The notes below the pieces were generated by a model. The model worked only from the letters and a program-made list of their open reading frames with translations, made no database searches and had not been told where the DNA came from. 64,000 nt of DNA from Auanema rhodensis. Its lineage: Eukaryota; Animalia; Nematoda. The stretch is taken from contig OZ059894.1 in NCBI GenBank assembly GCA_964057225.1, forward strand, positions 13,516,001 through 13,580,000. Reading direction: 5' to 3'. This document shows positions 8,234 to 59,400 of this stretch, piece by piece (position 1 is the first letter of the stretch; every line of letters starts with the position of its first letter). Made by a program: the position numbers and the translations under genes.

Positions 8234-11200
8234 AGCTCTATTCCACTTTCAGTTGAATTTCTTGTAGCTTATACTCAATTAAGGAAGTTTCACAGATTTT
8301 CAAATCGAATTCAACATACTTCTTTGCTATAATACAGAAAAAATAGGAAGAAAAGTTGAGAGCACTTCATTTTTACCAAATATCTTGCGAGACACACAAA
8401 AATAGCATTTCAATCCTTCTTTTTCAACTCGTTCCCTTTCTGACCTTCCCTTCATGTTCAAGAGTACTAAAATTTTGATTCATTTTTTCCTCCAAAAACG
8501 GAAAAAGCTTTTTCTTTTTTTCATATTCTGACACATATGTATATACACAAGTTATAACTTCAAAACGTAGCTTAATTGATCAAAAATTGCGAACAAGAAG
8601 CTTGTTGTTTATATTATTCCTCATGTATTTAGTCTAATCATGCATCTAATGAATGATCTTGTTTAGTATAATGATTCAAATAAGGTTCAAATTGCTCAAA
8701 TATTTTTCTATTCACTCGTTATACTTGTCTTTGAATATAATTTGTATGTCGCCGATTGAGGTGCAATTACCAATCAAAATTTCAGATCGCCGAGTAAGCA
8801 CGATGATCAAACATCGCCCTGATGAAAAGATTGCTTAAAGTTTGAACGATGAGAAGCACGATGGTAACGATGGCGTTGATATTTTGAGTTACTTCTTTTC
8901 ATAGTATTCTTCGAGTTCTTTTTCTTGTAATCATCTCATCAGTGGACTTCACTTTCATCACTAGACTTCGCTCCCATCAGTAGGATGTGCTCAAAAGCTT
9001 CGAAAAATCTTCATTGAATTCCGAAATGGAGAAAAATAGAATAGGGTGACGATCATAATGAAGTTTTGAAAAGCCAATAGAGAAAGCAGATACAAGGGGA
9101 AACGAAGAGAATGTTGAAGATGAGAAGTTTACAAATCACGGCATGAACTTCAAAGATCTTTGTGTGTGTATTGGGTGTAGAAGGACGTAGATTTATTTGA
9201 AAAAACCTTATCTATTTGTATATAAATAAATCCTTTTAAGCTGAACATCAAGAGTTGTTTAGGCTACAAGATAAGCCTAATAACTGTGTCCAATCGTTTC
9301 ATTTATATAGTTTTTCAAGAAAATCTATTTGGCTCAAGCGTTTTTCTGTTCATCTCCATTCTCAAGGGCGTTTCTTTCCATTTTTTGCTCAATTTCTCTC
9401 TTACTCTCAACAAGTCTCTTTACGTCTTTTCCTTCAAATTAAGCTATGAATTGTTAGAATGTAATCTTTCATGCATGTTTGATAGTTTGACACAATCGGT
9501 GAGAAGCATACCAATATGCTGAACTTACTGGTAAACCAGCGGGCAAGTTATCTCAACGTGCATAAGCATGTGTACGCAGTTGAGAATAAATTTTTTCGAG
9601 GGGAAAACAGAAAGTAGAATGAGTTTTGATGAAGAACGGGTACATTGGAATAGAAATAAAGTATAGAAAAAGCTGTAAGTAAGAGAAGGAAGTAGAAAAA
9701 AAAGAAACAAATTGAAGAAAAAAGGTTTCAAATCTGTTCGAAAACGCAATATTTATCTTTTTAATTTTGTAAAAGATGTCTGAAAGATATGTATAAAGAT
9801 AGATATTGAAAAACGTTTTAATTATAAAAACTAATAATCTATTTTAAGATTCTTACCAAATTTTTACGACATGTTGATGATATTGAAGATGAAGTTATCA
9901 TACTAACTAGTTTTATGCTACTATCTAGTATAAAGTATATGGTATACTAATAAATAAAATAATTATTTTAATTTATTTCCTGAAAAAGGTAGAAAAGTCA
10001 CGTTATTTATCCATTGTATGATTTATTTCTTACAATGTTCTAACGTACAAATATAATTGTGTAATGCTTCTCAATACCTTGTTTATTTATTTCTGTTAGC
10101 TCCACTCATTTACTTCTCAGAAAAAAGAGGAAATTAAAAATTTTCCAATATTTTTCTTTCTAATAGCCTGAAAAAGGCATTTTCATTTATCTTTTTTCTC
10201 ATATCAAATATAATACATGACTATGTTTCTGTCAGAAGTACAGAGTTGAAGACAAACTTTAGGATTCCAGCCTTAATTCAAAGCTGGTTCCAGGTAATAT
10301 CTTGTCTAACATTCCGGATCCTCTTCATTGCACATGTATTTAGTTCTATGTTTATCCATGTTTTTACCTCATTTTATATTTACAGAACATCTTTAACTAT
10401 TCAACTACAATCGCTTTTACTTTGTCGTTTTTTAAAATTTGTTTAATCTTTTCTGATCCTTTGCTCTCATCTCTCTTTCATACTATCTTATACTCCTTCT
10501 ATGGTTTTTGGCCTTTCTTATGCTTACCTTACTGCCCCAATTGAATCCTAACACTACCGTAATCTGTAAACTGAGACGTGACATCTTGAGGAAAAAATTT
10601 TTAAAAGATATTCAGAGCATCGTGCAGAAGAATCATTCACAATTGTATTATTTTTTTTTGAAAATAGTTAATTGGAATATGCAATAGCCACTCCAGCATT
10701 TTCATCCCATATTTGGTATCGCTTTAGATTTTAATTGAATTATGCTTTATCGTTTTACATCTCTCTTTCTATATTCCTCTCTAGCCCTTATTCTTCTCTT
10801 CTTAAAATACTCTTATAAACGTATAGTATAGTATATTATGCAAGATTTGTGTCTGTCGTATAAACGACTAACATAATTGCCACCTGAGCTCCATATTTCT
10901 TTTTCAAAATCGAAAATTTTTCTATTCATATTCATCGCTACCATCCTACGCATATTTTTATGTTTGAAGACACACGTTTCTTTCTATTTATTTAACCTAA
11001 TCTGATGATTTCAGTTTATTTCTTCCCTTTCTTCTATACTTAGTTCTATTGTTCTATATATATATAAGGACAACATCATTTCTTCAATAAAAATTTTTAA
11101 TATCTTACCTTTTTCTTCAACTTTCTTTCTTATTTTTAACATTCTTTCATATTTTACCATCTTTATTATCTAATCTACTTCACACCGTCAATGCAAAGTC

Positions 11201-14200
11201 AACTACTTGCCCTCCCCTCTCCGCCACTTTGACTCAACCTAACTACCCCTTCATCGTTTTCATTGCCCATCATCACAGCATTATTTTTCATGCCATATTA
11301 CAAACGTTCGCCATATGAACTTTTCATTTCTCCTAATAAATAAACAGAAAAAACTTGAATTTTTTAATTCATCAAAAGCTTATAAACTTTATTTTATGCA
11401 TAATGTGTATCCATCTGTATATGTACTTGCTTTTTCAAGTACACCATACTCTCAATATCCATAACAGGAAATCTTTATCGAAAATAGCAGTTCAGTTAAA
11501 ACTTTCGGTCTTTTTTCTTACCACCAGCTATATTTGAAAAGGGTATGAACAGTATTCATTTCTCCCTCTCTCTCTCTCTCTCTCCCTCTCTCTCTCTTTC
11601 TCTATCACGATTTTTCTGTTTCTTTTTCTTAAACTTTTCATATATATATATTCGAGATCTCAAGTGATTTGACCAATATTTTTTACTTTAATAACATAAA
11701 TATATATATGCATATTATACTAATATTTTCTTCTTTAAACTTTTCTATCATCGTTGAAACTATTGAATTGTTATAAACACCTGTTTTATTTCTGAATAAT
11801 AATAATTGCTCAACAATCATATTTACTTCAGCCTTTTTTACTTCTTTTATACGATTTTACTTATTCATATTATTCTTACATAACCTTCTCCGACATTTTG
11901 AAACATTCTTTTCTTTTCAAATATAAAGTTTATATTTCTTTCATCTATGCTGATCACATTTTATAAAACTTTATTTGTGCTTTGATATGATTTTTTTAGT
12001 TTAGTTTTTCTTTCAAATAGCACATTACGTTATTCTTTTTCTTTTATTCTAATCTTTCTATTAAAATATACATTTATATATATTCTTTTTAAATTATTAT
12101 TCCACACTTTGTATGTGCAAACTTTTTCTAATTTTCGTCTAATGATCTACATAAGCCATAGACATCTTATATTCATCTTCGAATTTTTCTCCTCATTTGT
12201 CCAATTTCCTCCGGTCAGTTTACGTTCACACTCACCCTGAAAGCTTTCGTAGTTATTTTACAGCATTTTTTTCTTCAAATTCGTTTTATTCTATTGCCTA
12301 TTTCAACAAAATATAAGAGATTTCTATTTCTCTCTCTCTCTCTCTCTCTTTTACTGAAAAACTATTGCTATTATTTATTTATTTTGAAAAACTTTGAATA
12401 TTTATGTCAAATACTAGTGTTAATTGTCTTGATATGATGTTAAAACGAAAATGTAATGAGAAGTAAAAAAGTGCAACCGTTTCATGTTAGTTCAAACTAA
12501 AAATGCAAAATGTGTTTGAAATTCACGTTAAATTCAAATGTCATCTCATTCTACAATAGCTTCTCCCCCCCCCCCACCACTTGGTTTACTCCAAAATAAA
12601 TTCAAATTTTCTAATAGCTTCGGTTCAAAATAATTTTCTAATGGAACAAATTTTGAAAACAGAAAGAAGAGAAAGTTTTTTATTGCTATTGTGACCGTTC
12701 GTTCGTTGTGTAGAAATCTCATATTACTCTAGCTGGTTAGGTTTGTGAGTAAAAGTGAATTTGTCAAATAGTTGTTTGTTGATTGAGATTCAAAGTTCCT
12801 CTTTGTATATATCCAAATAAAAACATATAAATAACGAAAGACGAGAAGTAAATGAAAACGACATAGGTAAGGTCTTTATTACAAATATCTCTTCAAAATA
12901 CAATTTAACTGAATATTTGCATATGTGTATGCCATAGTTGTGATGTTTTTAAGATGTTCTGAACTTTTTTAAAATTGCTAATCCGATGAGATTTAGCTAA
13001 TGTTATAAGAGCGCGAAATTCATAAGGATTGGTTCCGTAAACGCTGTTATCTTCTTTTTGTTATTTAAATGTTCTTCTAGCTTTTGCCTTTTCACCCTCT
13101 CTTACTTTCTCTTTTTCTCTCTTTATCTCACTTTTTCTGTCTTTTCCCCTTTTATGAAACGAACGGCCACCAGTTTTTTAAAAATTTTCCACTTTATTTC
13201 AATAATTCAAATAACGTTTCTGTCCTTTTCGTATATGAAATTTTCTTCAAAAAAGGCTGATTCTCCCATGAGACCTATTTTCTTTTTTTTTTGTTAAAAC
13301 AGTAGAAAATATGTCAAAGACAAATGCAAAGGATTCATTTTAATTTTGAGTTAGCACAGAACCTTAGCATATTACTAAGTATGACCTATTTCATTAGGCT
13401 TTGTGATGCCATCTCATCATCATTCAGATCTGTTTCCTCTCTCTCTGTCCTCCTCCTATTCCCCTCCTTCTCCTCCTTCATCTCAATATAATATCTTTGC
13501 ACTCCTTTTTCTTAACTTTTTTCTATTTACTCTAATATCTTTTATTTTTTAATTTCTTGTTATTTTAAAAATATTTATTATTTACATGATATAAAGCCAT
13601 CAATACCCTAAGATATTAGAATAGTTTGATTCATTGTAACAAATGTTGTTAAAAGCTTTTAATTCTAAACCACCAAGTAAGAATATGTGCTGTTAGGCAA
13701 CACAACCTTTTTTTCTTCATTTTTCAAAACTAACGATTAAGATTTAGGTGACAAAAAAAGAAAAGAAATAAAAGCGGATATGCTTCAGCTTGTATTGATT
13801 CTTAATTTTAAGTTTTAGCGAAATCGAGGAAAACAAAAAGGAACTATTCAAGAGATATTTTAAAGTTATTAAAACAAGAAAATATAAAATAATAACATTT
13901 ATAAAATAAAATTTCATTTTAAAGCTACTTTGATCAGTTATGCTCCCTCATAGTTATTTAAAATTGTATGTTTTTTCCTTTTTCATCGCACATTTTTATT
14001 TTTTTGAGCTTAAATCATTGTATAGTAATAGATCAAAAATCTTATAAGTTATAGATGACAATGATGATACATCCATCCAACATATAACACGTATATACTA
14101 TAGTCTATCTATATATATATCTATTTAAATATATTATATATATAAGATATATTACATATATACTATTCAACATATAGTTTATTACAGGAAATAATTTTAG

Positions 14201-44020: not shown

Positions 44021-46437
44021 ATTATATATGTAAATATATATATATTTATTTATTTTTAAAAAAAGATATATATTTATGTATATATATTTAGAATTACCCA
44101 TCCATGTTTGTGCTTTACGCCCTATGTCTTCTCCTGAAATAGTGGCAGCCTCATAAGGAGTGGTGAAACAATTATAAGCGAAATCGTTTATAATTATTAT
44201 TAATTTGAAATTAGAATTAAGATTGATTACTATATTAAGTATAAACAAAATAAAAATTATTGCTCTTGGATTGATAATCAAGAAATAACTAATACTATTA
44301 CTACTACTACTACTACTAGATAATTATTAATTAAATTAAAAATAAATAATATAATGCTAACTAGAAAGAAAAATAATTTTGTTAAAAAAACTTTAAAAAA
44401 AGAATAAGACGATTCGAAACAATGATGCAAAAACATAATCTTTCTTGTTTTGATATAACACAGAATGAAGTCCTCATACCTGTAAGTTCTTTGAATCGCG
44501 ATTCGATACCGAAGAGTGGTAAACATAGTTCCAAATAAAAAGGTAAAATGGTTAGCATATCAATTATATTCAAAGTTTTCTTAATAAATTCCATTTTTTT
44601 CGGATATATAGCAAACCTGTAATGAGTTAAATTCACCTTATTACCTTTTGTTTTATAAATTCACCTCAAGATATATTCAAAGGTAAACCAAGCAATACAA
44701 ACATATTCAATGACAACAAGCGTAAATGAAGGATTATCTGTTGGACGATACACAAATGTAGAAGGATTTTGGCTATTCACATCAGAATTTTGAAATTTAC
44801 TCTGAAAATGTTCGGCTTAAATTTAAGAAAAATAGAAATTCTTACTTCACTTCCTTTTTTTGCATGCATCATATGATAAAATGAAGCGTTTGAAGAGTCT
44901 TCTTGAAATTCTGGCATAGATCCAAGGATGAGACCTATATATTATAAATATTTAATTAATTAAATTAAATATTAATAAGAAATAATACCAATGACACTAG
45001 TGAAAACAAATACAACTGATAGGAGAGCGAAGATCGCTGCAGAATAAGATGATTGTGGATCTTCAAGAAATCGCCAAGTAGCTAAACGGAAGGAAGGCAA
45101 AATTTTCTAGAAAAATTGAAATTTTAATTTCAAAAATAAATTATTGTCAAATACAATTCCATCGAAATCAGTAACATAATCTTCTTCAGCAGAGAGATGT
45201 TGTTGATGTTTCTGTTTAGTCGAAGTAGTTCCATCATTTGGAAGAGCACAGCAAGCTGAGAGCTGAATAAGAAGAATCTCGTTGACATCAAAAATTGAAT
45301 TTTCAAGTACTTTCATATATGGATAGATTAAATTAGAAATAACCTACATATTCAGTTCCAATTCGCCAAAAAAGTAATTCTTCTTTAAACCGTTCAACGC
45401 ATACATTATGTGGTTTATGTAAACTTCCTAAAATAATATTCATAGTCTTTCTTTCCTTGAAAATGGAAATTTTTCTGGAAAGTAAACATTAAATTTTAAA
45501 ACCTGTTGCAAAGAAGTCCATAATATGTTCAGCCAATCTTGTATTTCTTTCCATATAATATTCTTCCGTAGATTCATCATATCCATCCACAATAGCTAAC
45601 CTAAAATAATAATAATTAAGTTAAATATAATAATAATATATAAAATATATAATAAAAGTTCTAGTTAATAAATATAATTAACCTTTGTTCATGATTTGAT
45701 TCCACTATATCATGCATCAGTGTTCTATCTGGAGTATGTAATTCAGTTCTGACACAATATGATTTTCCTCCAATATTCATACGAATATACATATCATTCA
45801 TACCACCACTGCCACCGCCATCTTTAATTATTAAAATTTCAGAACAAAAATTTATTTTTTATAAATTACCTTGGTCTTCTGTATATTTCATTAAAGCTGC
45901 TGCTCGAAATTGTACACGACGATTCAGCATATTCTCTTCATTTTCTTTGCCAACTCGCTAAAAAGGACATACAAAAGTAAGAAAAGAAAGTATTATTTTC
46001 ATTATAAACCATACTTCTACCTTTTCATCATTTTATTTTATTTTGTGTTTTGAAAATTTTCAATCAATTCATATGATTTGTCTAAAAAAGTTTCAGAAGT
46101 TCAAAACTAGTTGATGCATCTTATTTGCTACAAGGGAATGCTTCAAAATGCCATCAAATATAGCATGTGACCTATTTAGAAAATTTGAGAAGAAAAAGTT
46201 TAAAATGGAAGGAAATGTGATGATGAGAATCGGATGAAAAAATAGATTCTTTTATTTTTTTTAGAATCATATATCTAAATACAGATTTAGTTATAGTATA
46301 GAGATATTCCAATATAGTAATAAAGGTCAAGTAAACTTTCCGAGAAAAGAAGTTGTTTTTCATTTCTATTTTTCTTCCTAACATAGAAAATTTTCGAATA
46401 CCTCAGCTGCACGTCTGAATGATAACCGCAAAGCCAT
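42170..46437 (-). CDS. Voltage-gated K+ channel alpha subunit, Shab-related nematode KVS family (channel A, downstream copy); further alternative 5' exons extend to ~53030
   Basis: Common exon starts at 45957 (RVGKENEENMLNRRVQFRAA..). T1 domain (IRMNIGGKSY, EYYMERN, LHKPHNVCVERFKEELLFW); W.FLEDPQSS S1; NIIDMLTILPFYLEL S3; S4 VRVLRVLRMARVFKLARYS; SIPAGCWWCV; pore TMATVGYGD; S6 [17 protein letters not shown]. Last exon 42267-42170 reads AQMSAAANNYLLKRFPTRRRRANTIRNPNSIA*. The start given is the most proximal candidate first exon. Confidence 0.9.
43965..44016. repeat. (TA)n microsatellite in channel A intron
   Basis: Uninterrupted TA run. Confidence 0.95.
44098..44133 (-). CDS. Candidate 36-nt cassette exon of channel A (S3-S4 linker, adds EDIGRKAQTWMG)
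   Basis: ATTTCAG|GAGAAGACATAGGGCGTAAAGCACAAACATGGATGG|GTAATT; phase 1-1, matching the flanking donor (exon end 44480) and acceptor (exon start 43257); no stop codon. Confidence 0.7.
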
Positions 46438-47056
46438 CAGACCATAGAATTGGAAACGTCAAAGACGTATTGAATTTCAAGTTTAATTTTGAAAGGATTG
46501 AAGATCTCAGAGTAATAGCAATGATTGGAACTAATCGAAAGTAGCAGAATTAGGGCTAGCTGAACGATAAGATATGAAAAGGGATGGTCGTCGATGAAGC
46601 AGCCTTATAGAATATTCTGAATACTTCAGAGTGAGCTCAGTTCGAGATTAAGATAGAGAATCAGATTCGTAGCGCCAATTTCGTTACTTCTGATTATTGA
46701 GATCTTGAAGCATAAGATTTTGAGTAGGAAAAAGGTTTAGGGAGGAAAGAGAATTGATGAGGATAGACTACGTCGGATGTATCGTCAGATTGCATTGGCT
46801 AAGCTAAAGTGTGAAGTGCGTAAAGAACAAGGGATGTGAAGATAATGTAGAAGTGAAAGGTTTTTAGGGAGGAACAAGGACAATGAATGGGAAATAAGAG
46901 GAGAAAACTGATTATTATGATCGCTTCGTGAGAATCAGAAGGGTTAAGCCGAGTAGAAGTGAATCGTTAAAAGACAGTGAAGCACTAAAATCGGATGCCC
47001 AAAAGAGAGAATTTAGAAAACAAGCTTTGAACTCATCACTTATCCGTCGTACTCAC

Positions 47057-47134
47057 TAGATGTTCGAGCGCGGCAACGTCATGGACGCCGACGGCATCGC
47101 CGAATTCGTTTAAGGAAGAACGAGCTAGCCATTG
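47057..47134 (-). CDS. Candidate internal 5' exon of channel A (QWLARSSLNEFGDAVGVHDVAALEHL)
   Basis: GC-rich island; GTACAG acceptor, 78 nt, CTA|GTGAGT donor, phase 0-0, open frame. The frame is also open back to an ATG at 47242. Confidence 0.6.
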
Positions 47135-48183
47135 CTGTACTCGAAAAACAGAAGCTCTCCTTTTTCGTTTCTCTCTTCCTCTCTCTCTTCCTCTCTCTCT
47201 GTTCTTTTCTGAATATTTTTTGACACATCTTTTTCCTTTCATCCTATCATTTGATATTTCCTCCGAAACGTCTTTTGACGTGAATATTCTTTAATCATTA
47301 TCCGAGCGGAATGAAAATAAAATCGGAGAACAGATTCAATTGCTTTTCGGAATAAAGTAAAAGAAAAGATATATTCACCTAATTTCAAGTCAAAAGGACT
47401 ATAAATGAGAATTTTTGTTACATCTTGAAGATCCGAATTTTAATCTGTCTTTTCAAGAAGTGTCAATTTACTCAAAGTTTTGAAGGTAATGTTGGGCGGC
47501 CCTACTCTCATGAATATCTTTGATTAAGTTTTCAAAAAGAATATTCGCGATGAGATTGAGATATGATGGCATTTATGAAAAAATAATTGTTTACAAGAAA
47601 GAATAAGTTGAAAAAGACTTTAACTAAGAAAAATATTAGTAGTATATTTAGATATCACAAATGTTCTGAGAACTATTTTGAAGAAAAATAAAAGAGAATC
47701 AAGATCTAAAGAATAACACATACTATATATGAATATAAAAGAACATTTCATTTAAATATCATAATATCGTATGATATAATAATAATAATAATATTATTAT
47801 TATGTATTATTATTAAATATATTTATATTAATAAAATATTTTTTTTGTGTAAATGAGAAAAAAATAGAACTTTCTATTATAAAAAATAAACTTAAGCTAC
47901 TGAAAAAGATATTCCCATCTGATTGTAGATGTTCTTATACATATGAACTATGATAACTAAGAAACAATAAAGATGATAATGATGAAAGGCTTGGTGATTG
48001 AACGATAGGATTTCTAATTTGACTATATATAAATATATTTTAGTTTGTTAATAAGTATTATTGTAATATTAATTAAAATAATAAACATATATACATGTAT
48101 ATATGATAAACAAACATCATTTGGAATCTAAATCTAGTTATGAGACCAGTTCAAAGTTAAATATCTTAAGTAATATAACTTAC

Positions 48184-48222
48184 CTGAGATGCACATGTCC
48201 GCTTTAACCGATAGGATAACAT
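48184..48222 (-). CDS. Candidate alternative first coding exon of channel A (MLSYRLKRTCASQ)
   Basis: ACC-ATG start, 13 codons, perfect CAG|GTAAGT donor, phase 0 like the common acceptor at 45957. Confidence 0.6.
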
Positions 48223-49246
48223 GGTGAGCTTTATTAGAAGATGATAAGAAGAATGATATTAGTTGGTTGTCAAGGAAACATCCTTCATTGCTCTATTTTA
48301 AAATAAAAAATTACTGTTGTTTGAGCAAAATAATAAAAAGGAGAAAGGAATACATGACATGATAATGATTGTTTCAGCGTTAATTTACAAACGTAATCAT
48401 ATTATAAGATGGGATTAATGAAATGAAGCATCGAAGCAACAGAGTTTGAAACAAAATCAAAAGCAATCAAGAAGAAGTCAAATTGAAAATTGAAAAAATC
48501 GTCTAATTATCTGTCGATCACATGGAAATGAAAGATTGTTGGATGTACATACGTGCCTATCAATACGAGCTAGCTTTGACTATTGTTGTCCAAAAATACA
48601 AATTTTTGTTGAAAAATACAATTTGCAGATAAATGAAAACATGGAACTATTCAAAATAAAGTATGGTAATAATAAATTTGTAACTATAAATGAATAGTCA
48701 ATATGAAAACCTGGGCATTTTGATAAAAACGAAAATACGAATGTGATAGATTTGTTGCGAGCATTTTCTTCTCAGGCACCTTGAATACTATATCAAATGC
48801 ATATACAACATATTATGAATAATGTAAGAAAATAAGAACTTTTCTCATAGTTGTTATAATAATAATAATTATTATTATTATATATTATATAATAGTATAT
48901 CACATGGTTAATTGTTTCAAATATAGTTTTAAATTAAATCAACACAAAAAGTTCTTCGACACGGAAAAAAGTAAGTATTGAATTTCAATTTTTTTTAGAT
49001 TGTTATAACAAAAAATAAAAAAAAAAGTAGATAAATTTAATAAAAAAAGACTTTTTTTTATTATTTTCATAACAATTATGGAAAATCTTTTTATAAGATG
49101 AATGAAAAATTGGAAAGCCGTATAAACGAATTTTCTTTTCAGTTACGACAAATTGTAATAATGCTCATCTGAATTATGAATTTGTTCAGTAAGCAGAAAG
49201 CTGTTAATCAAAGATTATTTTACTAAAATATGTTTCTGAGTTAAAA

Positions 49247-49253
<7 letters not shown>

Positions 49254-49287
<34 letters not shown>
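49254..49287. repeat. (TA)n microsatellite
   Basis: Uninterrupted TA run. Confidence 0.95.
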
Positions 49288-49291
<4 letters not shown>

Positions 49292-51697
49292 AAAATATAT
49301 AATAATATATATTTGAAAAAGAAAATGTTATATTAGATTGAATAAATAATAATGAAATGTTATGAGAACTTATTCAGGATATCTATATCACAAAAATTAT
49401 TCAATGAAAAATTAGTTTTCTCAGGAAATTTATAAAATAATCATATAATCACAATGCCTAGAATCAATATAAATTCTGATCTCAGATTTAAGTGATCTGT
49501 TTTAAGCTAAACCCTTGAAGATGGATAACAATTATTCAAAATAAAGGAACCAAATTTTTTGTTTGAATATTCTTTGATCAAAAAAAAATAGATTTTCTAT
49601 TTAAAGAATTAAAAATGATTCATTTAATTCATTTGAAATTCATTGAGTTATGTATAATATTATATTGACATATAGTTATATATAACTATATAATATGAAA
49701 TATAAAGATATAAATATATTTTGAGAACAAAAAATCAAAATTTGAAACATTTTTTCTTATTTTAATTGAAAAAATATATCGAAAAATTAAAAAATTGGTT
49801 GGTAACGTGCAAGAGAAAAAGAGAAATATCTTCGTTGGGAAACATACATACATAGTATAGACTTCTACTATGTTCATCAACAAATAATTAGTATAAGATA
49901 TGCATATTTTGAAATATTATTTTAAAAATAAGAAAAGTAATTAGAAAAAGAACTAATATTAAATATAACATTTATAATATTATTTATTATATTTATGCTA
50001 TATGACATTTAATATTATTGATATGATTATAATAATTTTTTATATAAGTATCATCATCATATATTCATTCATAAAAGTATTTACAGGTTTGTTTTCTTTT
50101 TTTTTTAATTATTGAAACAGGTTGTATTCAATTTATTTTTCATTTGTTTTCTAATAAAATGAATAAATATATTATATTATATTTAATATATTTTTGTTAA
50201 TCAAATAATATAATTTATATTCATTCAAAAATTAAGGAAGAATTGAATATCTGTATGTATATGTATATCAATCATTAACTTTAATCAAAAGTTCTTTTAT
50301 TTTTAAATTTTTCAGCTTTTTTAAAAGAAAAATAAGTACAAATTTTCTTATTCTATTCATATATTTTATTTATGTAAATGCTTGTATATTCGTTGAGCAT
50401 AAAGCACAAATAAGTATAAAATAGCTTGGCTGAATGAAGTAAGAGATAAAGATAGAAGATGAATATCAGAGATTAAATTGGCTTGAAGGATAGAGAAGAG
50501 AGAATTGACAAAAGATATGAAATGAAGAAAGATTATAGAAAGATATGAGATACTAGAAATGGCTTCAGATTAAGTATACATATTAGATCAGCTTAATATG
50601 GAAGAGAATATAATTGATATGAAAGATAAAGATCAAAATTACAGTTAAATTTCACAAAAATCGACTTGTTTTCAAGATAATTCTAACTTGAATACATCAA
50701 ACGCTATATTCTGCAAACCTATACTGAATATAAAATATAAAATACAACATATTTTATATAAAATATAAAATAAATATGATTATAAAATATTTTGAATAAA
50801 GAAGGATTTCGATAAGAATATCCCCTATCTTTTCATTTTGATACTTTTTCTTCTTATTAACAAACGTTAAAACCAAAAATTGTGGAAGAAAAGATCATGA
50901 ATACTTAGATGACATAAGGAAGGTTGAAGTGTCATTAGAGAGATAGAAGAATACAAAATGTAAATGCATGAGATGCTTCGTTCTCTATATTTGGAAGCCT
51001 TATGCAACCTTCTGTAAGATCTAAATAACACTTTTATTTGAAAATTTTGGAAAATATTTTGCGAAATGTCGAGAATAAAAATAGAAATTCAGCTTATGAA
51101 GCAATGAAAAGTAAGATAGGATTAAGAAAAAAATTGGTGAAATCGTTTTGAATATACATATGTATGTCAACAACTTCCGTTAAAACAACTGATTGGAAGA
51201 CTCGTCTATCAGCAAATCTTAGATACATATGTAGATTCGCATATATTTTACTATTGATATCTTTCACCCTCACTTTCAGTCATCGTAAACCATTCTTTCT
51301 AGGATTCCAATTTCAAGTTGCTTTTTCTCTTTTAAGAATTATACTTTGAGTATAGAAACTAGACAAAGCCACCATCTATCATATCGAATATCATTAAAAA
51401 GAAAACGAGAAAACACATTTCGTTGGTTAAAAGTTATATTGAACGAAATGAAAAAGGGAATCAAAGTATTATTATACTGTTTGAAATATGATATTTTCTA
51501 TTATTAAATAGAAATTAAAATGAAATTAGTCTTAGATATTCTAGAAAGAATTTCTTCTTTTTCTTTATTTTTGGAATAAAGAAAATATTAGATGTGAGAG
51601 TTTTCTGAAGATGATGCTAATGATGAAATTCGTTTTCTCATGCGGTTTTCGATTATTTTCAATGAGGAGATTCACCCCAAAAAAATATGTCACTGAC

Positions 51698-51807
51698 CGA
51701 GCTTAGTGATGGAACTGATCTCTTGTGGGTTCGTCTTGCGTGCATTTCCAATGATATTCTGGTTCCACTGCTTAGCAGATCCTTCTTCTTTCTTGTTATA
51801 TTTAGTT
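51698..51807 (-). CDS. Candidate distal 5' exon of channel A (ATG 51745: MHARRTHKRSVPSLSS)
   Basis: CAATAG acceptor at 51808, frame open throughout, TCG|GTCAGT phase-0 donor. Confidence 0.5.
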
Positions 51808-52929
51808 CTATTGAGAGAATATAATAGATTTGATATTATAGTTAACTACTGAAATTATTAATTATTTGATTTTCAAATATTAAAATATTCACATATTTTA
51901 TAAAATTATAAAAGCATAAATATATACGCATGGCTTGAATATAAAAAAAATTGGAATATATTATAATATTAAGATTGTATAACAGATGTTTTCACATTGA
52001 ATATATATTATAAATAATTATTATTTATATTATTTCTTATCTCATAAAGGCTATTAAATGTTTTTTTTTGTTTGTAAAAGTTTAGTAAAATTGTGTTTTT
52101 GTAATTTATAATTATCATATTATTTAAAAAAAAAGAAAACAAAATAATTTAATTTTATAATATATAAAATGAAAATATAACATATGCTTATACTATAAAG
52201 GTATTATAGAAATATAGATAAGATTCTTTATATATACATAGATGTATGTATGTATAATGACAAAAACAATCGATCAATCTCTCGTAGATTTGTTTTTATA
52301 TAAATATTTTTTTTGTTTTTAATATAATTTAGAACTTAAATATACAAATTAATATATTTGATAACATTTTATTTTAAAATTTAATATAAAAGACATAAAT
52401 AAATGAAAATTTATATACATGTTATATATAAGGAAAAACGTTTGTAATACAGAAAAGAGAGTAAAAATTAAAAAGAAAGAGAGGTGAAAAGATGATACAA
52501 GGAGAAGAGCAAGGAGGTAATTGAAAGAAAAAAATAAATCCTCGTCTTTAATTAGTAAAATACTTAAAAGAAAGAAAATTGGAATGAAAAAGGAGTTAAG
52601 ATACATACTTCGTGCACACACAAATGAACTTCTTTTGGAAATTTTCCATATGAATAAGAAGTGAAAACAGGAAAGACGAGTAAATTTGAACAGGAAACTA
52701 TTGAATATTTATATGTTTTTTTATAAATTTTGATAAGAATCAACTAAAAGAAAAGAAAAGAAATGATATGTGACATAGTTATCTGAATACATAAACAGAT
52801 GTATCTATATCTTATGAGTGAATGAAGATTTATTCAAAATCAAAAACAAATGATAACTATATGTATATAATGAAGTAAAAGTTAATGAAATTGTATGTGA
52901 TTCTCAGCATGATCGAAAGCACGTTCGAG

Positions 52930-55900
52930 CTATACGTCTTGGGAATGGCGTAGAAGTGGTTCAAATTTTCGTCGGCTTGAAATGTTGAAAAATGAGTTTT
53001 CTTCACGGAACATCGGCATTTCATAGAGTCCTGAAATTGAAAAACATTTGAAGGATTACAAGCTATTTGTCCGGTTATCTGAAGATAGTTTTAATAATTT
53101 TAGATAATATCATCATAAATATAATAATAATAATAATTATTATAAATTACTTGTTATACTAAACATATAGTTAAGTACAATAAACTATAACATTTTGTCT
53201 ATTGATGGTAATATCTAAAGACTAAAGATTTTCCATCTTCATTTTCTATCTTAAATTGAATTAACTATGTTATATATATATATGTATGTATGTACATATA
53301 TGTATAACTATATTAATATTATCTATAACTTTTCATTCTTTTTGACTCAATTTTTAAGAAATATATATTATTATATATGAAATAACATAAAATTCAAAGT
53401 TATATGTCATATAAAGAACATAGAACAATATTTATATCAAAATACATCTAAATATGAACTAAATAATATTATAATTATATTCAATAATATGAAGAAACTA
53501 TTATAGTTATCTATTTGGCCTTAACTTATTGTGTATAAGCCTATTAGAGATTTGTTAAAGCTTCATGTTTTATGACAAAAGATATGATCTATGTATTGAA
53601 AATATTTTATTTTATTAAAAAAAATCAGAAATTTAGTTAAATAACCCATAAAGGATAGTGTTTATACAATGTTTTGTAAAGCATATTTGTAAATTCTCAT
53701 AATAAAATGTATAATTAAGTTTACTATGTGAAACATAGTATTCATGACTTTCCAATCCGTATAATATGTATATCTGCTATTAGTAACATATACATACATG
53801 AAACTTAAATGTTTAAGTTTTAAAAAACACATAAAAGTTATCGAAATAAGTTTGAATGGAAAAGTTATTAGTAAATATATAGAAATAAGAAGTTGTAGCC
53901 CGTTTGAACAGGAGAATCATGATGAAGACAACATTGTATAAGTGAGATTACTTGGTTAGTATTTCATTAAATGAATATATATCAAGATATATATATAGCG
54001 GAACTAATGAAAGGAAATGTAGAAGAATGAAATTATATAAAGAAAAAAAAGGAGAATTAGATATATATAATATTTCCTTCATAAAGCAGTTATACAAAAT
54101 TTCACAAAACTCTTTAGAATAAATATCTTTTAGTTTGTTTCCGACGAGAAGAACCATTTCGATCTTCATCTTCATTCCAGCAACTTGTTGATTCAGCAAA
54201 TTTATCAATAATCATTGATATTGGGAATGCCAATACAATGATACCACATACAGATGCCATTGCTGCTACAACTTTTCCACCTAAATTTATTAAAAAATTA
54301 ATAATACATTCGAAAAGAAAGTATAAATATCATACCAGCTGTTACAGGCACTAGATCACCATATCCTACAGTTGTCATTGTGATTACACCTAAAACACAA
54401 GTGCATTTATATATTTAATATATCAATATATGATTTTATAATTTATATATATATATATATTATATGTAATAGTTAAGAAAATTATAACTTACACCACCAG
54501 CATGCTGCTGGAATTGAATAGAATTTTGAGTTCGGCTCATCTCGTTCAAAGAAATAAATTGCAGTTGAAAATAGCATGATTCCTATACAATCAAATATAA
54601 ATATATAGATTTTATATAGTTAATATGATACCTGTCACTAAGAACATTCCCAACATACTTAACTCGGCTGCTGATTTCTTCATGGTCTGGCCAAATGCTC
54701 GAAGACCTGTACTATATCTGGCTAATTTGAAGATTCGAGCTACTCGAGCCAAACGCATCACTCTTACTACTAACATTGCTCCTGAAATTATTATAAATTA
54801 AAGTATTTAACTATAAAACTATTAATGTTTAACCTCTGAAGTTACGTATCCATTGTAATTCATTGAATGCTTCAATCAAGAAAGGCAAGATCGTTAGGAC
54901 ATCAATAACATTGAGTGGAGAACGCAAAAATTCCGCCTAAAAAATTAAAAGATTTCTAACTTTAGTAATTGAAATAAATTTATACCTTTCGTGGACTAAC
55001 AAGAAATCTGATTATATACTCAAATGTGAAATAAATCATACATCTATAAATATAATTTAATTGAAATAGATAATAATAAATAAGACTTACAAAATTTCTA
55101 GCCACGTCAACAAGAAATGAGGCTCTCTATTTTCATCTTGAAGCTCTGGCATTGAACTTAATATTAAACCTTAACATATGGCACATTTAATAACATTTCA
55201 AATATTATATATATTTTACCCAATAGTGATAGAAGAACAAAAAATGCTGAGCCTATTGAAAATAATTTGGCTGCAGAAGAACTTCGAGGATTCTCCAAAA
55301 TCCTCCATAATTTTAATCGAAGTGGTCCAAACAGTACTTTATCAAAATAAGACGATGGGTATGAATCCACATATGCCTAAATAGAAAAAATATAAATTAG
55401 TTTTAGAAATAAAATAAATTTTAAAATCAACCGTTTAAAGTAATTTTTAAAATTAAAATGATTCTTATATTACGTGAGAAAAGCATTTTTTTTCACGTCA
55501 CTGAATAAATAAAAATTGATTGGACTACTCAGAGATGTATTTTTAACTTTAATTTTGAAATTTTTTATTAATAAATTATAACAATTTTCTATTTGTAACA
55601 ACTTTATGTAATTTTCAAACTTGGTTTACTTGATGTAACGTCCAAACGTTTTCTTTGACGTCGAAAATACTTCAGAAGCGTTATCATGTTATAAGATATA
55701 AATATTTCATAAAGGGTCGTTTGACCATATTAACGCATAGGAAATAATAAATGAATATGTAAATGCACTTTAATTTATTTATATACATATAGCTAACGCT
55801 ATATCAATAATCACTTTTTTTATAATTTAGGATATGTGTTTATCTTTTTTTTTTAATAAAAATATTTCTTTTTTTTTCTAAAGATGGAAGTATTTTATTT

Positions 55901-56478
55901 AATTTCATTAACTATACCTTTTCATTTTTAAGTTTTGATGTCATATTATTATTTTCTTCTAACATGCAACAAGGTGCCATAGCTTGCACTGGAACTCGCC
56001 AATAATCCAATTCATATCGTAATCGTATTGGACAGACATCCATTGGACGATGTAATTTTCCTAAGAAAAATATTAGTTAACTTTAAATAATAATAACTAA
56101 CCTGTAATATAATAATCAACAACATATTCAAAAATTATTGGGCTACGTTCAAAATAATATTCATTATTGGATTCAAAGTAGGCATCGCAGTCTGTTAATC
56201 TTTCTACATGATTCTTCTGACAAAATACAGATAGACGTGAGGATTCTAGACGACGATGTACCTGTGAAATAATAATTTTCTTCTGAATTTATTAAATTTG
56301 TTCTTACAATCTCAACTGGTAACTTTGCTTGTCTACCTCCAACATTTACATTAATGAGCGATTTCTTGACAGATCCATTTGAAGCGACTGGTGCTCGAGG
56401 TGGCTGCGATGATGCCGGATCCGGAACTACATATTCAGGTGATAGTAATAATTTTGTTTGACAATTAATATCACACAT
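52930..56478 (-). CDS. Voltage-gated K+ channel alpha subunit, Shab-related KVS family (channel B, upstream copy); stop at 54114 (unspliced) or 52930 (spliced)
   Basis: ATG at 56478 after TTATAG. T1: [60 protein letters not shown]. Then [11 protein letters not shown]; [13 protein letters not shown]; S4 [22 protein letters not shown]; SIPAACWWC; pore TMTTVGYGD; S6 [17 protein letters not shown]. Confidence 0.9.
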
Positions 56479-59400
56479 TCTATAATATCAGATGATAATA
56501 TGCTAAAAATACAAAAAATTGAAAAAAAATGCATGAAGAACATAAGGAAGCATCTGGAAAAAGCGTAGACGAATAAGGAAGAGATAACGAAGATGATGAA
56601 TGATTAAACATCTCAACTGCGGATCAAATCGATGTTATATAGATAGATGTATGTATGTATGTTCTTTCATATATGTACATATGTAAAAAAGTATCAATTG
56701 AAAGACGAAGATTTTAAAATATCATAAGATAAATATAGTTTATAATAACCAATAATAAAGAAAAAGATTATATAATACAAACTGTGATCATGATGACATT
56801 TAATAGATTTTTGAAGATTAAATATGAGAATACAACGAATAATAGCTTATTGAGTTTGAAAATTGTTAGGAAAATAGTTATTAGAATTAGTATATATAGC
56901 GAAGGCTTTAGACTAAGGAGTGAACAACAGATGAAAGGTCTTTTCGACTTTTCATGTACGACATCCCTATAAGTTCTTCTTCAATCTCAATCTTGTTTAG
57001 TTAGATGCTCTGAATAAGATTGCAGCAATTTACTGAATGATCAATGGTCATCTAAAGGCCACTCGTATATTAAAAAGTTTGTTTAGAATGTATGTATGTA
57101 TGTATATGGAGGGAAAATGATGAAAATATGCTTACAAAAACTAGAAAAGTAGGAATTTCAATATAAATAACAAGAGTTCTTATAGTAAAACTAAGAAAAT
57201 AGAGTAATCATGAAGGTTGAACCTAACTATAATGATGATCTTATTCTCATTTCACATGATTTCCCTCTTTCTCACTCTCTCTATCCCTCTCTCTCTCTCT
57301 CTCTCTTTCAAAGGACTTATTACGTTCTATTTTAACTTTGATCTCAATATGTTTGATTGTTTCATAAACTATATAATAGTCTTTGATTCTTTATGACTCC
57401 TTCTTTTCTCACTAATCTTTTGTTCACAATTTCATGTTTCATTCATTTCTTTCAAAATTTCAAATTACCGATTTGCGGAAAAACTCTCACTGAAAACCAT
57501 TTTGTTTAGTATTTGATTTTTGAATATTCATAGATTATATTAGATCTTAGTGTATAGTTGTAAGAAATCACATTAAACGGGTTCAAATTAAATTATTTTT
57601 TTTAGTAAAATAAACAAAAGAATATTAACTATATGTATATTAGGTTATATAAAAAAACAATTTATAAATAAAATATTTTTATAATTTTGAAGAATATTTT
57701 CAACTTTTTTCTTATTATATTTATATATTTTTATAGTTTTTTTTAATTATATTTTATATAATTTTTTGTTGTTATGGTTTTAAATACTATTAAAACCTTC
57801 TTACATACATACATGTTACAAGTACCAATGAACCTTCCAACTCACATATCTATGCACTTTGCAAAAAAAAGTTGTAAAAATGACGTTTCAATATAAAACT
57901 TTTTACATTTGCATGAAAAAAAGTTTTTTTGAAGAATGTTCTGCTGAAGAGCACAGAAACTATTCCGAATGCCTTGAAAGATGAATTATGTTCTGAAATC
58001 GTGCAAGAAAAGAAAAAGAAGAAAATGAGTTTGCTCTTGATAGCTCTCTCTTTTCTTTCCATCTTTTTTTTATATTTTCTCTTCGAATATCCTGTGTAGT
58101 CTTCATCTTTTTGCTCATTTTTTAACATCCACCTTAGTCAAAAAGAAAAAAGACATCAATACTAAATGATATTGCAAGCAATCTTCATCATCTCATTCTA
58201 CACATTTGCATGTGTATGTCTTTGAGACATCATTGTATTTTACAATACAACATTCATGTAAAGAAATCTTTTTTTCTGTTTTAAATTATTTTTATGAAAT
58301 ATAAAAGATTTTATTGAAATAAGTATGTAATTTATATAAAATTACAGTATAAAATATCCTGAAATTAAATAAGAAATATCAAAATGTCTTATTAGTAAAA
58401 TATATTTTCACTGAATACGGTATATTCATTGAATCAAATTATTATTAAACTCATTAGAGTGTAAGTATTACATCAAAGTAGTATAAGACGTAGTTTCTCT
58501 ATATGATTGAATCTTATTAAAATTTATTAAAATAACCCAAATAAAGTTTTTTTTTTCAATTTTACAAATCACATAAGATTCACTTATGCGTATTTAATCA
58601 AAATTTTTTTGAAATGCTACATATTTTTTTTGAAGCGTAACTATTGATAAAAAAAAATTTTTAATTAAAAACAGAATTTGTAATTCAAAATTTTGAAAAT
58701 ATAGTCTCAGTCATGATTAAATTCAAAGTGGATACTGATTTAACATAGTAAAATTGAATATATAGATTTAATAATTAATTAGCCATAATAATAATAAAAA
58801 CAAAACAAAAATAATGATATTATTAAATTAAAATATGATGTTGATGTTAGAAACTTATCAAAATATATAAAGATAAATGCAAAAGAGCATGCATGTGTAT
58901 ATACATATGTTTCTGCAGATACGAATGTACAAGATACATATATCTAGTATAATTACTTTTCTGCTGAAAAATTATTATATTTAGTATAGCTAGCTATATA
59001 AAAATTTATATAAATATAAAGGGAATCTAATGAATTAGAATAATAATTTGATGAACATCAGTATCTTCAGATTTTATTATTATTATTATGAGATTGGATG
59101 AAATTCTGGAATGGACAATGACTATTTTAATTCAAAAAAAAAATGTTATTATAACTATAAATTATTGTTTAGTCCATTTATAGAAGATTATAGAACTTAA
59201 CTATATACATATAATAAAATAAAAAATAAAAATGAAACATTGATTTCAGATGAATGAATTTGAAGCTACATGAAGGTTGAAGATCTCTAATCTAAAATGA
59301 AACGATATGAGAATGAGCAGAAAAATTGAGAATAAAGTGACAAGAGAATGAAAGCAATATGAATCCTTTTATTATTGGCTATATGACGGACCATATGACA

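What the first reader, a model, noticed from the sequence alone, without database searches (positions are those of the whole stretch)
45870..53030. Array of alternative first exons giving channel A interchangeable short N-termini (candidate inactivation balls)
Seen in sequence: four ATG-containing mini-exons, all ending in phase-0 donors compatible with the common exon at 45957. They are 46437-46402 MALRLSFRRAAE|GTATTC; 48222-48184 MLSYRLKRTCASQ|GTAAGT; 51745-51698 MHARRTHKRSVPSLSS|GTCAGT; and 53019-52936 [28 protein letters not shown]|GTATAG. There is also an optional 26-aa spacer exon at 47134-47057. Established: Shaker N-type inactivation uses a hydrophobic-then-basic N-terminal ball on a tether, and alternative N-termini tune its kinetics. 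Inference: promoter choice selects the ball and the spacer exon sets tether length. The Cys in MLSYRLKRTC could add redox sensitivity, as in Kv1.4 and Kv3.4 balls.
Basis: partly seen in the sequence, partly recalled or inferred. Interest (0 to 1): 0.7.

Follow-up and report, generated by a model that had tools for sequence, protein, structure and literature searches.

The report
Alternative first exons of worm potassium channel
A nematode voltage-gated potassium channel gene very probably starts from at least three interchangeable short first exons, as its C. elegans counterpart C32C4.1 is annotated to do; what the alternative protein tips do is still untested.

Summary
No RNA check was possible in this species.

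**Supported by conservation (three first exons):**
- 48222-48184, MLSYRLKRTCASQ. It is 13/13 identical to the first exon of C. elegans C32C4.1 and of Auanema. All 8 and 11 nucleotide differences are synonymous.
- 46437-46402, MALRLSFRRAAE. It is 12/12 identical in Auanema at the collinear site. All 5 differences are synonymous.
- 51745-51698, MHARR... It has collinear homologues in Auanema, C. elegans, C. briggsae and a strongylid transcript.

**Evidence from relatives:** C32C4.1 is annotated with six N-terminal forms from four alternative first exons, one read-through extension and an internal start, all on one common exon. RNA-derived contigs from a strongylid show two of these first exons spliced to one acceptor.

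**Not supported:**
- The exon at 53019-52936. Only a 16-nt block is conserved and the donor is weak.
- The "spacer" exon at 47134-47057. It has no counterpart in either relative. In relatives, tether-length variation comes from read-through of the MLSY donor.

**Verdict:** this is an ordinary, conserved gene architecture, new only for this genome. The inactivation-ball function is plausible (about one in three) but untested. The caps have only 3-4 non-polar residues before the first arginine. An ER-retention or partner-binding role is about equally likely.

The parts
51698..51745 (-). Distal alternative first exon, MHARR-type cap (16 codons, donor GTCAGT, phase 0)
   Evidence: Read. The collinear Auanema homologue is MHTRRSNKRSAHSL|GTAAGT at L002:7025-7066. 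C. elegans and C. briggsae have MHARSRR... first exons and a strongylid transcript begins MYARRKK.... The codon test is weak (p about 0.05). The exon sits in a local GC island.
48184..48222 (-). Middle alternative first exon, MLSYRLKRTCASQ cap (13 codons, consensus donor GTAAGT, phase 0)
   Evidence: Read. It has the only consensus donor among the ATG...GT ORFs. It is 13/13 aa identical to C. elegans C32C4.1 and Auanema, with only synonymous changes. The Auanema annotated protein joins it directly to the common exon.
48259..48288 (-). Small upstream ORF in the putative leader of the MLSY exon, inside a conserved block (48328-48236)
   Evidence: Window MKDVSLTTN-stop against Auanema MKMDVSLTTR-stop, with the stop at the same aligned column. 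It is absent from C. elegans and from the strongylid transcripts.
46402..46437 (-). Proximal alternative first exon, MALRLSFRRAAE cap (12 codons, donor GTATTC, phase 0)
   Evidence: Read. It is 12/12 aa identical at L002:11750-11785 with 5 synonymous nt differences. Its position matches the C. elegans MVRLK exon.
46655..46699 (-). Conserved non-coding block about 220 nt upstream of the MALRL exon (candidate promoter or leader element)
   Evidence: 80% identity over 51 nt to L002:11509-11559, collinear.
45870..45957 (-). Common second exon (29 codons plus 1 base; phase-0 acceptor). It holds an internal in-frame ATG at 45930 that could start a cap-less isoform.
   Evidence: Read. It is 25/29 identical to residues 14-42 of Auanema P0163. 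It is homologous to the C. elegans exon beginning RLQAEEN, whose internal Met starts the 496-aa isoform.
45683..45821 (-). Third exon: glycine-rich linker and start of the T1 (BTB_2) tetramerisation domain
   Evidence: It matches the Auanema and C. elegans proteins.
52936..53019 (-). Proposed most distal first exon (28 codons, donor GTATAG): status doubtful
   Evidence: The sequence reads as stated. The donor is weak and two other ATGs lie nearby, one upstream and out of frame. Only a 16-nt block including ATGTTYCGTGAAGAA aligns with Auanema (E 0.21), and no compatible ORF or donor follows there. It lies in a GC island, 1.1 kb downstream of the stop of the upstream channel gene.
47057..47134 (-). 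Proposed optional 26-codon spacer exon: unsupported
   Evidence: The frame is open and the donor is GTGAGT. There is no match in Auanema or C. elegans. It is single copy in the genome, has no Rfam match or notable fold and no Pfam match. It is part of an 840-nt GC island, 46400-47239.

Best explanation
**What it is.** The gene on the minus strand is the orthologue of C. elegans C32C4.1, a nematode Kv2/Shab-related voltage-gated K+ channel. It has a T1 domain, six transmembrane segments and a GYG pore.

**Architecture.** Its 5' region holds at least three alternative coding first exons: MHARR at 51745, MLSY at 48222 and MALRL at 46437. Each ends in phase 0. Each is inferred to be spliced to the single acceptor at 45957. 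By analogy with relatives, each has its own promoter or trans-splice site.

**Product.** The subunits would differ only in the first 12-16 residues. Behind that cap lie a shared linker of about 41 residues, ending in a glycine-rich stretch, and then the T1 domain. A cap-less form starting at the internal ATG (45930) is likely too.

**Function (inferred).** The caps are short, basic peptides under strong purifying selection, so the peptides themselves matter, not just promoter choice. My preferred single mechanism, at roughly one in three, is that they are autoinhibitory N-terminal gating peptides (N-type, ball-and-chain-like).

**Shown versus inferred.** Shown: exon conservation, phase compatibility and collinearity, and isoforms and transcripts in relatives. 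Inferred: use of these exons in this species, and any effect on gating.

The 53019 exon and the 47134 spacer are probably not part of the system.
For: - **Orthology.** The S5 exon is 92% identical to C32C4.1. Gene order matches Auanema sp. JU1783: upstream Kv, this Kv, RRM, Yip1, PIH1, FAD-oxidase, Kunitz. The best solved relative is Kv2.1.
- **C. elegans isoforms.** C32C4.1 has eight RefSeq isoforms with N-termini MHARSRR..., MLSYRLKRTCASQ (with or without a 52-aa extension), MVRLK, MFSSVSK... and an internal Met. All join one common exon. Their genomic order was mapped.
- **Collinear spacing.** Window, Auanema and C. elegans agree: MHAR, then 3.0-3.8 kb, MLSY, then 1.5-1.8 kb, MALRL/MVRLK, then 0.4-0.9 kb, common exon.
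- **Selection on the peptides.** Only synonymous differences occur in the MLSY and MALRL exons.
- **Independent donor scan.** In Auanema the three homologous exons are three of the four best-scoring (score 3 or more) ATG...GT candidates.
- **Transcripts in a relative.** Intron-less RNA-derived contigs from a strongylid carry MLSY... or MYARR... joined to the same downstream sequence. One keeps the 3' end of SL1.
- **Junction.** The Auanema annotated junction equals the window's predicted 48184|45957 junction.
- **Ball reading (general knowledge unless cited).** Each cap has a few non-polar residues followed by a basic cluster. A glycine-rich linker precedes T1. Orthologues vary tether length after the MLSY cap. 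Alternative N-termini set N-type inactivation in Shaker, and in DPP6 variants (PMC3366920).
Against:
- **Weak donors.** The donors of MALRL (GTATTC) and MHAR (GTCAGT) are weak in this genome.
- **Weak statistics for MHAR.** Its conservation test is borderline (p about 0.05).
- **Against the ball mechanism.**
  - Only 3-4 non-polar residues precede the first arginine. [quoted passage not shown]
  - Perfect 13-residue conservation looks more like a specific binding or sorting motif than a loosely constrained plug.
  - The closest solved relatives, Kv2 channels, are not known for N-type inactivation (general knowledge).
  - No paper on C32C4.1 function was found.
Confidence: 0.8

Rival explanations
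1. The first exons are real, but the caps are sorting, assembly or partner-binding signals rather than pore blockers. Examples would be N-terminal di-arginine or RXR-type ER retention masked on co-assembly, or a docking site for a kinase or auxiliary subunit.
For: Every N-terminus in the family puts arginines close to the initiator Met: MHARR, MLSYRLKR, MALRLSFRR, MVRLKR, and the internal starts MERRV and MLNRRV. MHARR and the internal starts place RR within the first five residues, the classical N-terminal di-arginine position (recalled from the literature, not tested). Absolute conservation of 13 residues between this worm and C. elegans fits a specific recognition motif. A known precedent is the RXR retention signal in the alternative N-terminus of hERG1b (from memory).
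Against: MLSY and MALRL do not fit the strict first-five-residues di-arginine rule. No localisation data exist. The variable tether length after the MLSY cap in relatives is more naturally explained by a ball-and-chain.
Confidence: 0.3
2. Promoter choice is all that matters. The alternative first exons exist for cell-specific expression, and their few codons are functionally neutral.
For: Alternative promoters with short first exons are common in nematode neuronal genes (general knowledge). Separate conserved non-coding blocks lie upstream of the MLSY and MALRL exons.
Against: Neutral codons would not keep 13/13 and 12/12 residues through 8-11 and 5 exclusively synonymous changes.
Confidence: 0.08
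3. The mini-exons are chance ORFs in AT-rich non-coding DNA, and the gene simply starts at the common exon.
For: About 44 ATG...|GT phase-0 ORFs occur in the region, and similar numbers occur elsewhere in the window. This remains the likely reading for the 53019 exon and the 47134 spacer.
Against: Three of them are conserved at the peptide level at collinear sites in two other genera, and match annotated or transcribed first exons. An out-of-frame ATG at 45941 precedes the internal start at 45930.
Confidence: 0.03
4. The 53019 element belongs to the upstream channel gene (a long 3' UTR or its terminator region), or is a regulatory element between the two genes. It is not a coding first exon of the downstream channel.
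For: It lies 1.1 kb downstream of the conserved stop codon of the upstream Kv gene. Only 16 nt plus a short upstream motif are conserved, and the Auanema copy has no compatible ORF or donor. C. elegans has no first exon upstream of MHAR.
Against: It is one of only three GC islands in the 8-kb region; the other two contain conserved first exons. An acceptor-like TTTCAG precedes it, and the conserved block includes an ATG.
Confidence: 0.55

Closest known systems
C. elegans C32C4.1 (uncharacterised Kv channel; RefSeq isoforms NP_505725, NP_001122871, NP_001256235-NP_001256240)
   Same: It is the orthologue (92% identity in S5). The MLSYRLKRTCASQ first exon is identical. An MHAR-type distal exon and a short M-V-R-L-K exon sit at the position of MALRL. 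All join one common exon in phase 0. The internal Met start is shared too.
   Different: C. elegans has an extra proximal MFSSVSK exon and a 52-aa read-through extension of the MLSY exon. The window has neither. In C. elegans the upstream neighbour is a DM-domain gene, not a second Kv gene.
Drosophila Shaker alternative 5' exons (the ShA/B/C/D/H type N-termini) and N-type ball-and-chain inactivation
   Same: One channel core carries several alternative N-termini that could set inactivation. The tip is partly non-polar then basic, on a flexible chain in front of T1 (general knowledge; structure in PMC12460158).
   Different: The Shaker ball has about 10 non-polar residues; here there are only 3-4. 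This channel is Kv2-like, not Kv1. No electrophysiology exists for it.
DPP6/DPP10 and Kv-beta1 N-terminal variants from alternative first exons
   Same: Alternative mRNA initiation gives short variable N-termini. Some confer fast N-type inactivation on a Kv complex (PMC3366920).
   Different: Those are auxiliary subunits. Here the variable tip is on the pore-forming subunit.
hERG1a/1b alternative first exons with an RXR ER-retention signal in the 1b N-terminus
   Same: An alternative first exon gives a short arginine-rich N-terminus on a K+ channel subunit (recalled from the literature).
   Different: A different channel family. Retention is untested here, and only the MHARR cap fits a strict N-terminal di-arginine position.

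Membership tests
Orthologue of C. elegans C32C4.1 (nematode Kv2/Shab-related channel) | T1 (BTB_2) domain, six-TM Ion_trans core and a GYG pore | tested here: met
   Exon-wise Pfam hits to BTB_2, Ion_trans and Ion_trans_2. The exon translations show S1-S6 and TVGYGD.
Orthologue of C. elegans C32C4.1 (nematode Kv2/Shab-related channel) | Closest similarity to C32C4.1 orthologues rather than other kvs paralogues, with conserved gene order | tested here: met
   92% identity to C32C4.1 in S5. The other kvs genes are only about 40% identical to the H. contortus orthologue. Seven-gene synteny with Auanema.
Alternative-first-exon architecture | Two or more ATG-bearing first exons ending in the same phase as one common acceptor | tested here: met
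   The same layout is seen in Auanema and C. elegans.
Alternative-first-exon architecture | Transcripts that carry the first exons mutually exclusively | not testable with these tools
The feature is met in relatives: strongylid RNA-derived contigs L005 and L006-L008 and the C. elegans RefSeq isoforms.
N-type (ball-and-chain) inactivation domain | Non-polar N-terminal end long enough to plug the inner pore (about 10 residues in Shaker) | tested here: not met
   Only MLSY, MAL or MHA precede the first arginine. Compare the Shaker structure (PMC12460158).
N-type (ball-and-chain) inactivation domain | Cluster of positive charges behind the tip, and a flexible chain to T1 | tested here: met
   Two to four Arg/Lys within residues 4-9 of each cap. 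A 29-residue common exon plus a DGGGSGG linker precede T1. The N-terminal 42 residues of the Auanema orthologue folded with pLDDT under 50 (weak).
N-type (ball-and-chain) inactivation domain | Fast inactivation lost on N-terminal deletion and restored by the free peptide | not testable with these tools
   Needs electrophysiology. The complex prediction gave no answer.
N-terminal di-arginine / RXR ER-retention signal | Two arginines within the first five residues of a cytosolic N-terminus | tested here: inconclusive
   Met by MHARR and by the internal start MLNRR. Not met by MLSYR... or MALRL.... The rule is recalled from the literature.

The most novel reading that the evidence does not exclude
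The three conserved caps are genuine interchangeable inactivation (or gating) peptides on a Kv2-like channel, a family not known for N-type inactivation. Promoter choice then sets A-type versus delayed-rectifier behaviour cell by cell. The invariant MLSYRLKRTCASQ tip would be a new, unusually short and basic kind of ball, possibly tuned by its Thr/Cys.
Probability: 0.3. Interest if true: 0.55.

Novelty: new member of a known kind. Interest (0 to 1): 0.35.

Why it matters
The result gives a correct 5' gene model for this channel in a genome that, as far as these searches show, carries no annotation for it. It also shows that the multi-promoter layout of C32C4.1 is conserved across rhabditid nematodes, including parasitic strongylids.

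The 13-residue MLSY cap is invariant despite saturated synonymous change. That marks an uncharacterised channel with a clearly functional, easily testable N-terminal module. The test is to express the C. elegans isoforms and compare gating and surface expression.

It is not a new principle. Alternative N-termini on Kv channels have been known since Shaker.

Tried and rejected
- **Complex prediction.** Four copies of the pore module of the Auanema orthologue plus its N-terminal 42 residues gave "no answer". This is not evidence either way.
- **Fragment search.** A word-index protein search with the first 100 residues of the Auanema protein found no fragments.
- **PDB search.** The N-terminal 42 residues had no match, even at E up to 10.
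- **RNA checks.** An Rfam scan of 45500-54500 gave only a sub-threshold mir-297 hit outside the elements. The spacer region folds no better than shuffles.
- **Pfam.** The 62-codon ORF through the spacer and the ORFs at 53019 had no hits.
- **Spacer conservation.** The spacer peptide found only low-complexity noise in Auanema and C. elegans by tblastn.
- **Non-coding blocks.** The window-Auanema blocks are not found in C. elegans.
- **Locus look-ups.** Look-ups with the shorter isoforms failed because only the longest product is on record. The longest isoforms worked.
- **Rejected: homology of the 53019 exon to the Caenorhabditis MFSS/MPFS exon.** There is some resemblance to the C. angaria N-terminus, but that exon is the most proximal one in C. 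elegans and this one is the most distal.
- They were searched exon by exon by reference, and whole-protein searches used orthologues' database proteins.


Full report
**Observation**

- 46437-46402: MALRLSFRRAAE|GTATTC
- 48222-48184: MLSYRLKRTCASQ|GTAAGT
- 51745-51698: MHARRTHKRSVPSLSS|GTCAGT
- 53019-52936: 28 codons|GTATAG
- 47134-47057: an open 26-codon stretch between an AG and GTGAGT

The common exon starts at 45957, right after a TAG that serves as acceptor and as in-frame stop. It runs to 45870. A 48-nt intron follows. The next exon (45821-45683) encodes a DGGGSGG linker and the start of the T1 domain.

**Is the pattern more than chance?**

The pattern by itself is cheap. The region holds 43-44 ATG...|GT phase-0 ORFs of at least 10 codons. 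Other 7-kb tiles of the window hold 0-10 with donors as good as those of the 46437 and 51745 exons. Only the 48222 exon has a consensus donor, which is rare in shuffles and in the rest of the window.

**What the gene is**

Exon translations give BTB_2, Ion_trans and Ion_trans_2 hits and a TVGYGD pore.

A second Kv gene lies upstream on the same strand, at about 56480-54114. Its stop codon is conserved with Auanema.

An exhaustive search with the S5 exon led to nematode Kv proteins. A word search with the H. contortus hit listed the orthologues. Cluster look-up identified the C. elegans orthologue as C32C4.1, with eight RefSeq isoforms.

The window's S5 exon is 92% identical to C32C4.1. The best solved relative of the Auanema orthologue is Kv2.1.

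The Auanema sp. JU1783 locus (L002) has the same gene order as the window: Kv, Kv, RRM, Yip1, PIH1, FAD-oxidase, Kunitz.

**Isoforms in relatives**

C32C4.1 isoforms start in six ways:
- MHARSRRSARRQ...
- MLSYRLKRTCASQ
- the same cap plus a 52-aa extension
- MVRLK
- MFSSVSK...
- an internal Met in the common exon

All join the same common exon. In the C. elegans locus (L003) the order is MHAR (10001), MLSY (13847), MVRLK (15379), MFSS (16010), common exon (16338). The 52-aa extension is a read-through of the GTGAGA donor to a donor at 14041. It is not a cassette exon. H. contortus has a 10-aa version of the same VRSR... extension.

C. briggsae has the MHAR, MLSY, MRLK and MFSS forms.

Four intron-less contigs from public runs carry full ORFs of the orthologue and cluster with a Heligmosomoides protein. 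They begin either MLSYRLKRTCASSQ or MYARRKKSS..., and are identical from the next codon on. One MLSY contig still has the 3' end of the SL1 leader.

**Footprinting against Auanema**

blastn of window 54300-45800 (minus strand) against the Auanema intergenic and 5' region gives a collinear series of islands in otherwise unalignable DNA:
- the last exon of the upstream channel
- a block in that channel's 3' UTR
- a weak block at 53046-52992
- a block upstream of the MLSY exon
- the MLSY exon
- a block at 46699-46655
- the MALRL exon (87.5% over 40 nt)
- the common exon

A scan of the Auanema region for ATG...|GT ORFs finds three matching exons. They are MHTRRSNKRSAHSL|GTAAGT (7025-7066), MLSYRLKRTCASQ|GTAAGT (10001-10039) and MALRLSFRRAAE|GTATGA (11750-11785). 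Only one other candidate has a donor of comparable score.

Spacing is alike in the three genera.

| Interval | Range across window, Auanema and C. elegans |
|---|---|
| MHAR to MLSY | 3.0-3.8 kb |
| MLSY to MALRL/MVRLK | 1.5-1.8 kb |
| MALRL/MVRLK to common exon | 0.4-0.9 kb |

**Codon tests**

| Exon and comparison | nt differences | aa changes | Simulation p |
|---|---|---|---|
| MLSY, window vs Auanema | 8 | 0 | about 1e-5 |
| MLSY, window vs C. elegans | 11 | 0 | 0 of 200,000 trials (below 5e-6) |
| MALRL, window vs Auanema | 5 | 0 | about 9e-4 |
| MHAR, window vs Auanema | 13 | 5 of 14 residues | about 0.05 |

For MHAR the start, the M-H-x-R-R...K-R-S...S-L pattern and the donor position are kept.

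The Auanema annotated protein joins MLSYRLKRTCASQ directly to residues that are 25/29 identical to the window's common exon. That reproduces the predicted 48184|45957 junction.

**The two unsupported elements**

For the 53019 exon, only a 16-nt block (ATGTTYCGTGAAGAA plus one base) and a short upstream motif align with Auanema (E 0.21). The Auanema copy has no compatible ORF or donor. The window's donor GTATAG is poor, and another ATG in a different frame lies 5 nt upstream. The element sits 1.1 kb downstream of the upstream channel's stop. It may be a regulatory element or a non-coding exon. I give it about 15-20% as a coding first exon.

The spacer (47134-47057) has no counterpart in Auanema or C. 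elegans. It is single copy. It has no Rfam, fold or Pfam signal. It lies in an 840-nt GC island that also holds the MALRL exon and its conserved upstream block. That island is more likely the promoter and leader region of the proximal isoform.

In this worm, read-through of the MLSY donor hits a stop after five codons. So the tether-length variation seen in C. elegans and H. contortus is not evident here.

**Mechanism**

What is shown:
- at least three conserved, phase-compatible, collinear first exons
- strong purifying selection on two of the peptides
- annotated or transcribed use of the homologous exons in relatives

What is inferred:
- use of these exons in this species
- separate promoters or trans-splice sites
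- any effect on the channel

The caps are short and basic, placed before a shared linker of about 41 residues and T1. This fits the general form of ball-and-chain peptides. Variable tether length after the MLSY cap in relatives points the same way.

Three things point away from a pore plug. Only 3-4 non-polar residues precede the first arginine, while it is the non-polar end that plugs Shaker (PMC12460158). Perfect 13-residue conservation suggests a specific recognition motif. Kv2-type channels are not known for N-type inactivation.

The recurrent M-x(1-4)-R-R theme includes the internal starts. It makes an ER-retention or assembly signal, or a kinase or partner site, about equally likely.

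The MALRL cap resembles the N-termini of orthologues from more distant nematodes such as Steinernema, Acrobeloides and Panagrellus: MSLALSAKK, MMLNLATKKK, MVNLAAMKK. This is a lead only.

**Literature**

Four papers in the library mention C32C4.1, and I read two of them. One of those concerns a neighbouring locus (C32C4.16); the other predicts a cassette exon in the S3-S4 region. Neither studies function, and the titles of the other two do not concern it.

**What could not be done**

I followed the instruction to go on with other tools and laid no reads. The window's exons were not joined into a spliced protein. They were searched one by one by reference, and orthologues' database proteins were used for whole-protein work.

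**Verdict**

It is wrong or unproven for the fourth and for the spacer. The functional reading remains an untested hypothesis. The architecture is already annotated for the C. elegans orthologue, so this is a new member of a known kind.

Noticed in passing
window 48259-48288 (-); L002 about 9880-9912: A small upstream ORF in the conserved block before the MLSY exon. The window reads MKDVSLTTN-stop and Auanema reads MKMDVSLTTR-stop, with the stop at the same aligned position. It is absent from C. elegans and from the strongylid transcripts.
   Followed up: partly
window 45924-45941 (-): An out-of-frame ATG in the common exon opens a 5-codon ORF whose stop overlaps the internal in-frame ATG at 45930. 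That internal ATG corresponds to the start of the 496-aa C. elegans isoform.
   Followed up: no
window 54114-56480 (-); L002:2615-4971: A tandem paralogous Kv gene lies upstream. Its stop codon is conserved with Auanema, and a conserved 3'-UTR block sits at 53955-53896. One database model (Aphelenchoides besseyi, 860 aa) fuses two such channels. The conserved stop here argues for two separate genes.
   Followed up: partly
A 2007 paper predicted a cassette exon in C32C4.1; its flanking peptide (KEFTG...) matches the S3-S4 region (PMC1904267).
   Followed up: partly
window 47057-47134, within GC island 46400-47239: A single-copy patch of about 58% GC in a genome of about 28% GC. It has no match in relatives, no RNA family and no fold signal. 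Its origin is unexplained.
   Followed up: partly
L003:13886-14041; H. contortus isoforms: In C. elegans and H. contortus the donor after the MLSY exon (GTGAGA...) can be read through as V-R-S-R... to a downstream donor. This adds 52 or 10 residues, so it is alternative 5' splice-site use conserved between the two genera.
   Followed up: yes
L007:1-10 (public RNA-derived contig): The 5' end keeps CAAGTTTGAG, the 3' end of the SL1 leader, about 200 nt before the MLSY start codon. So this isoform is SL1 trans-spliced in that strongylid.
   Followed up: yes
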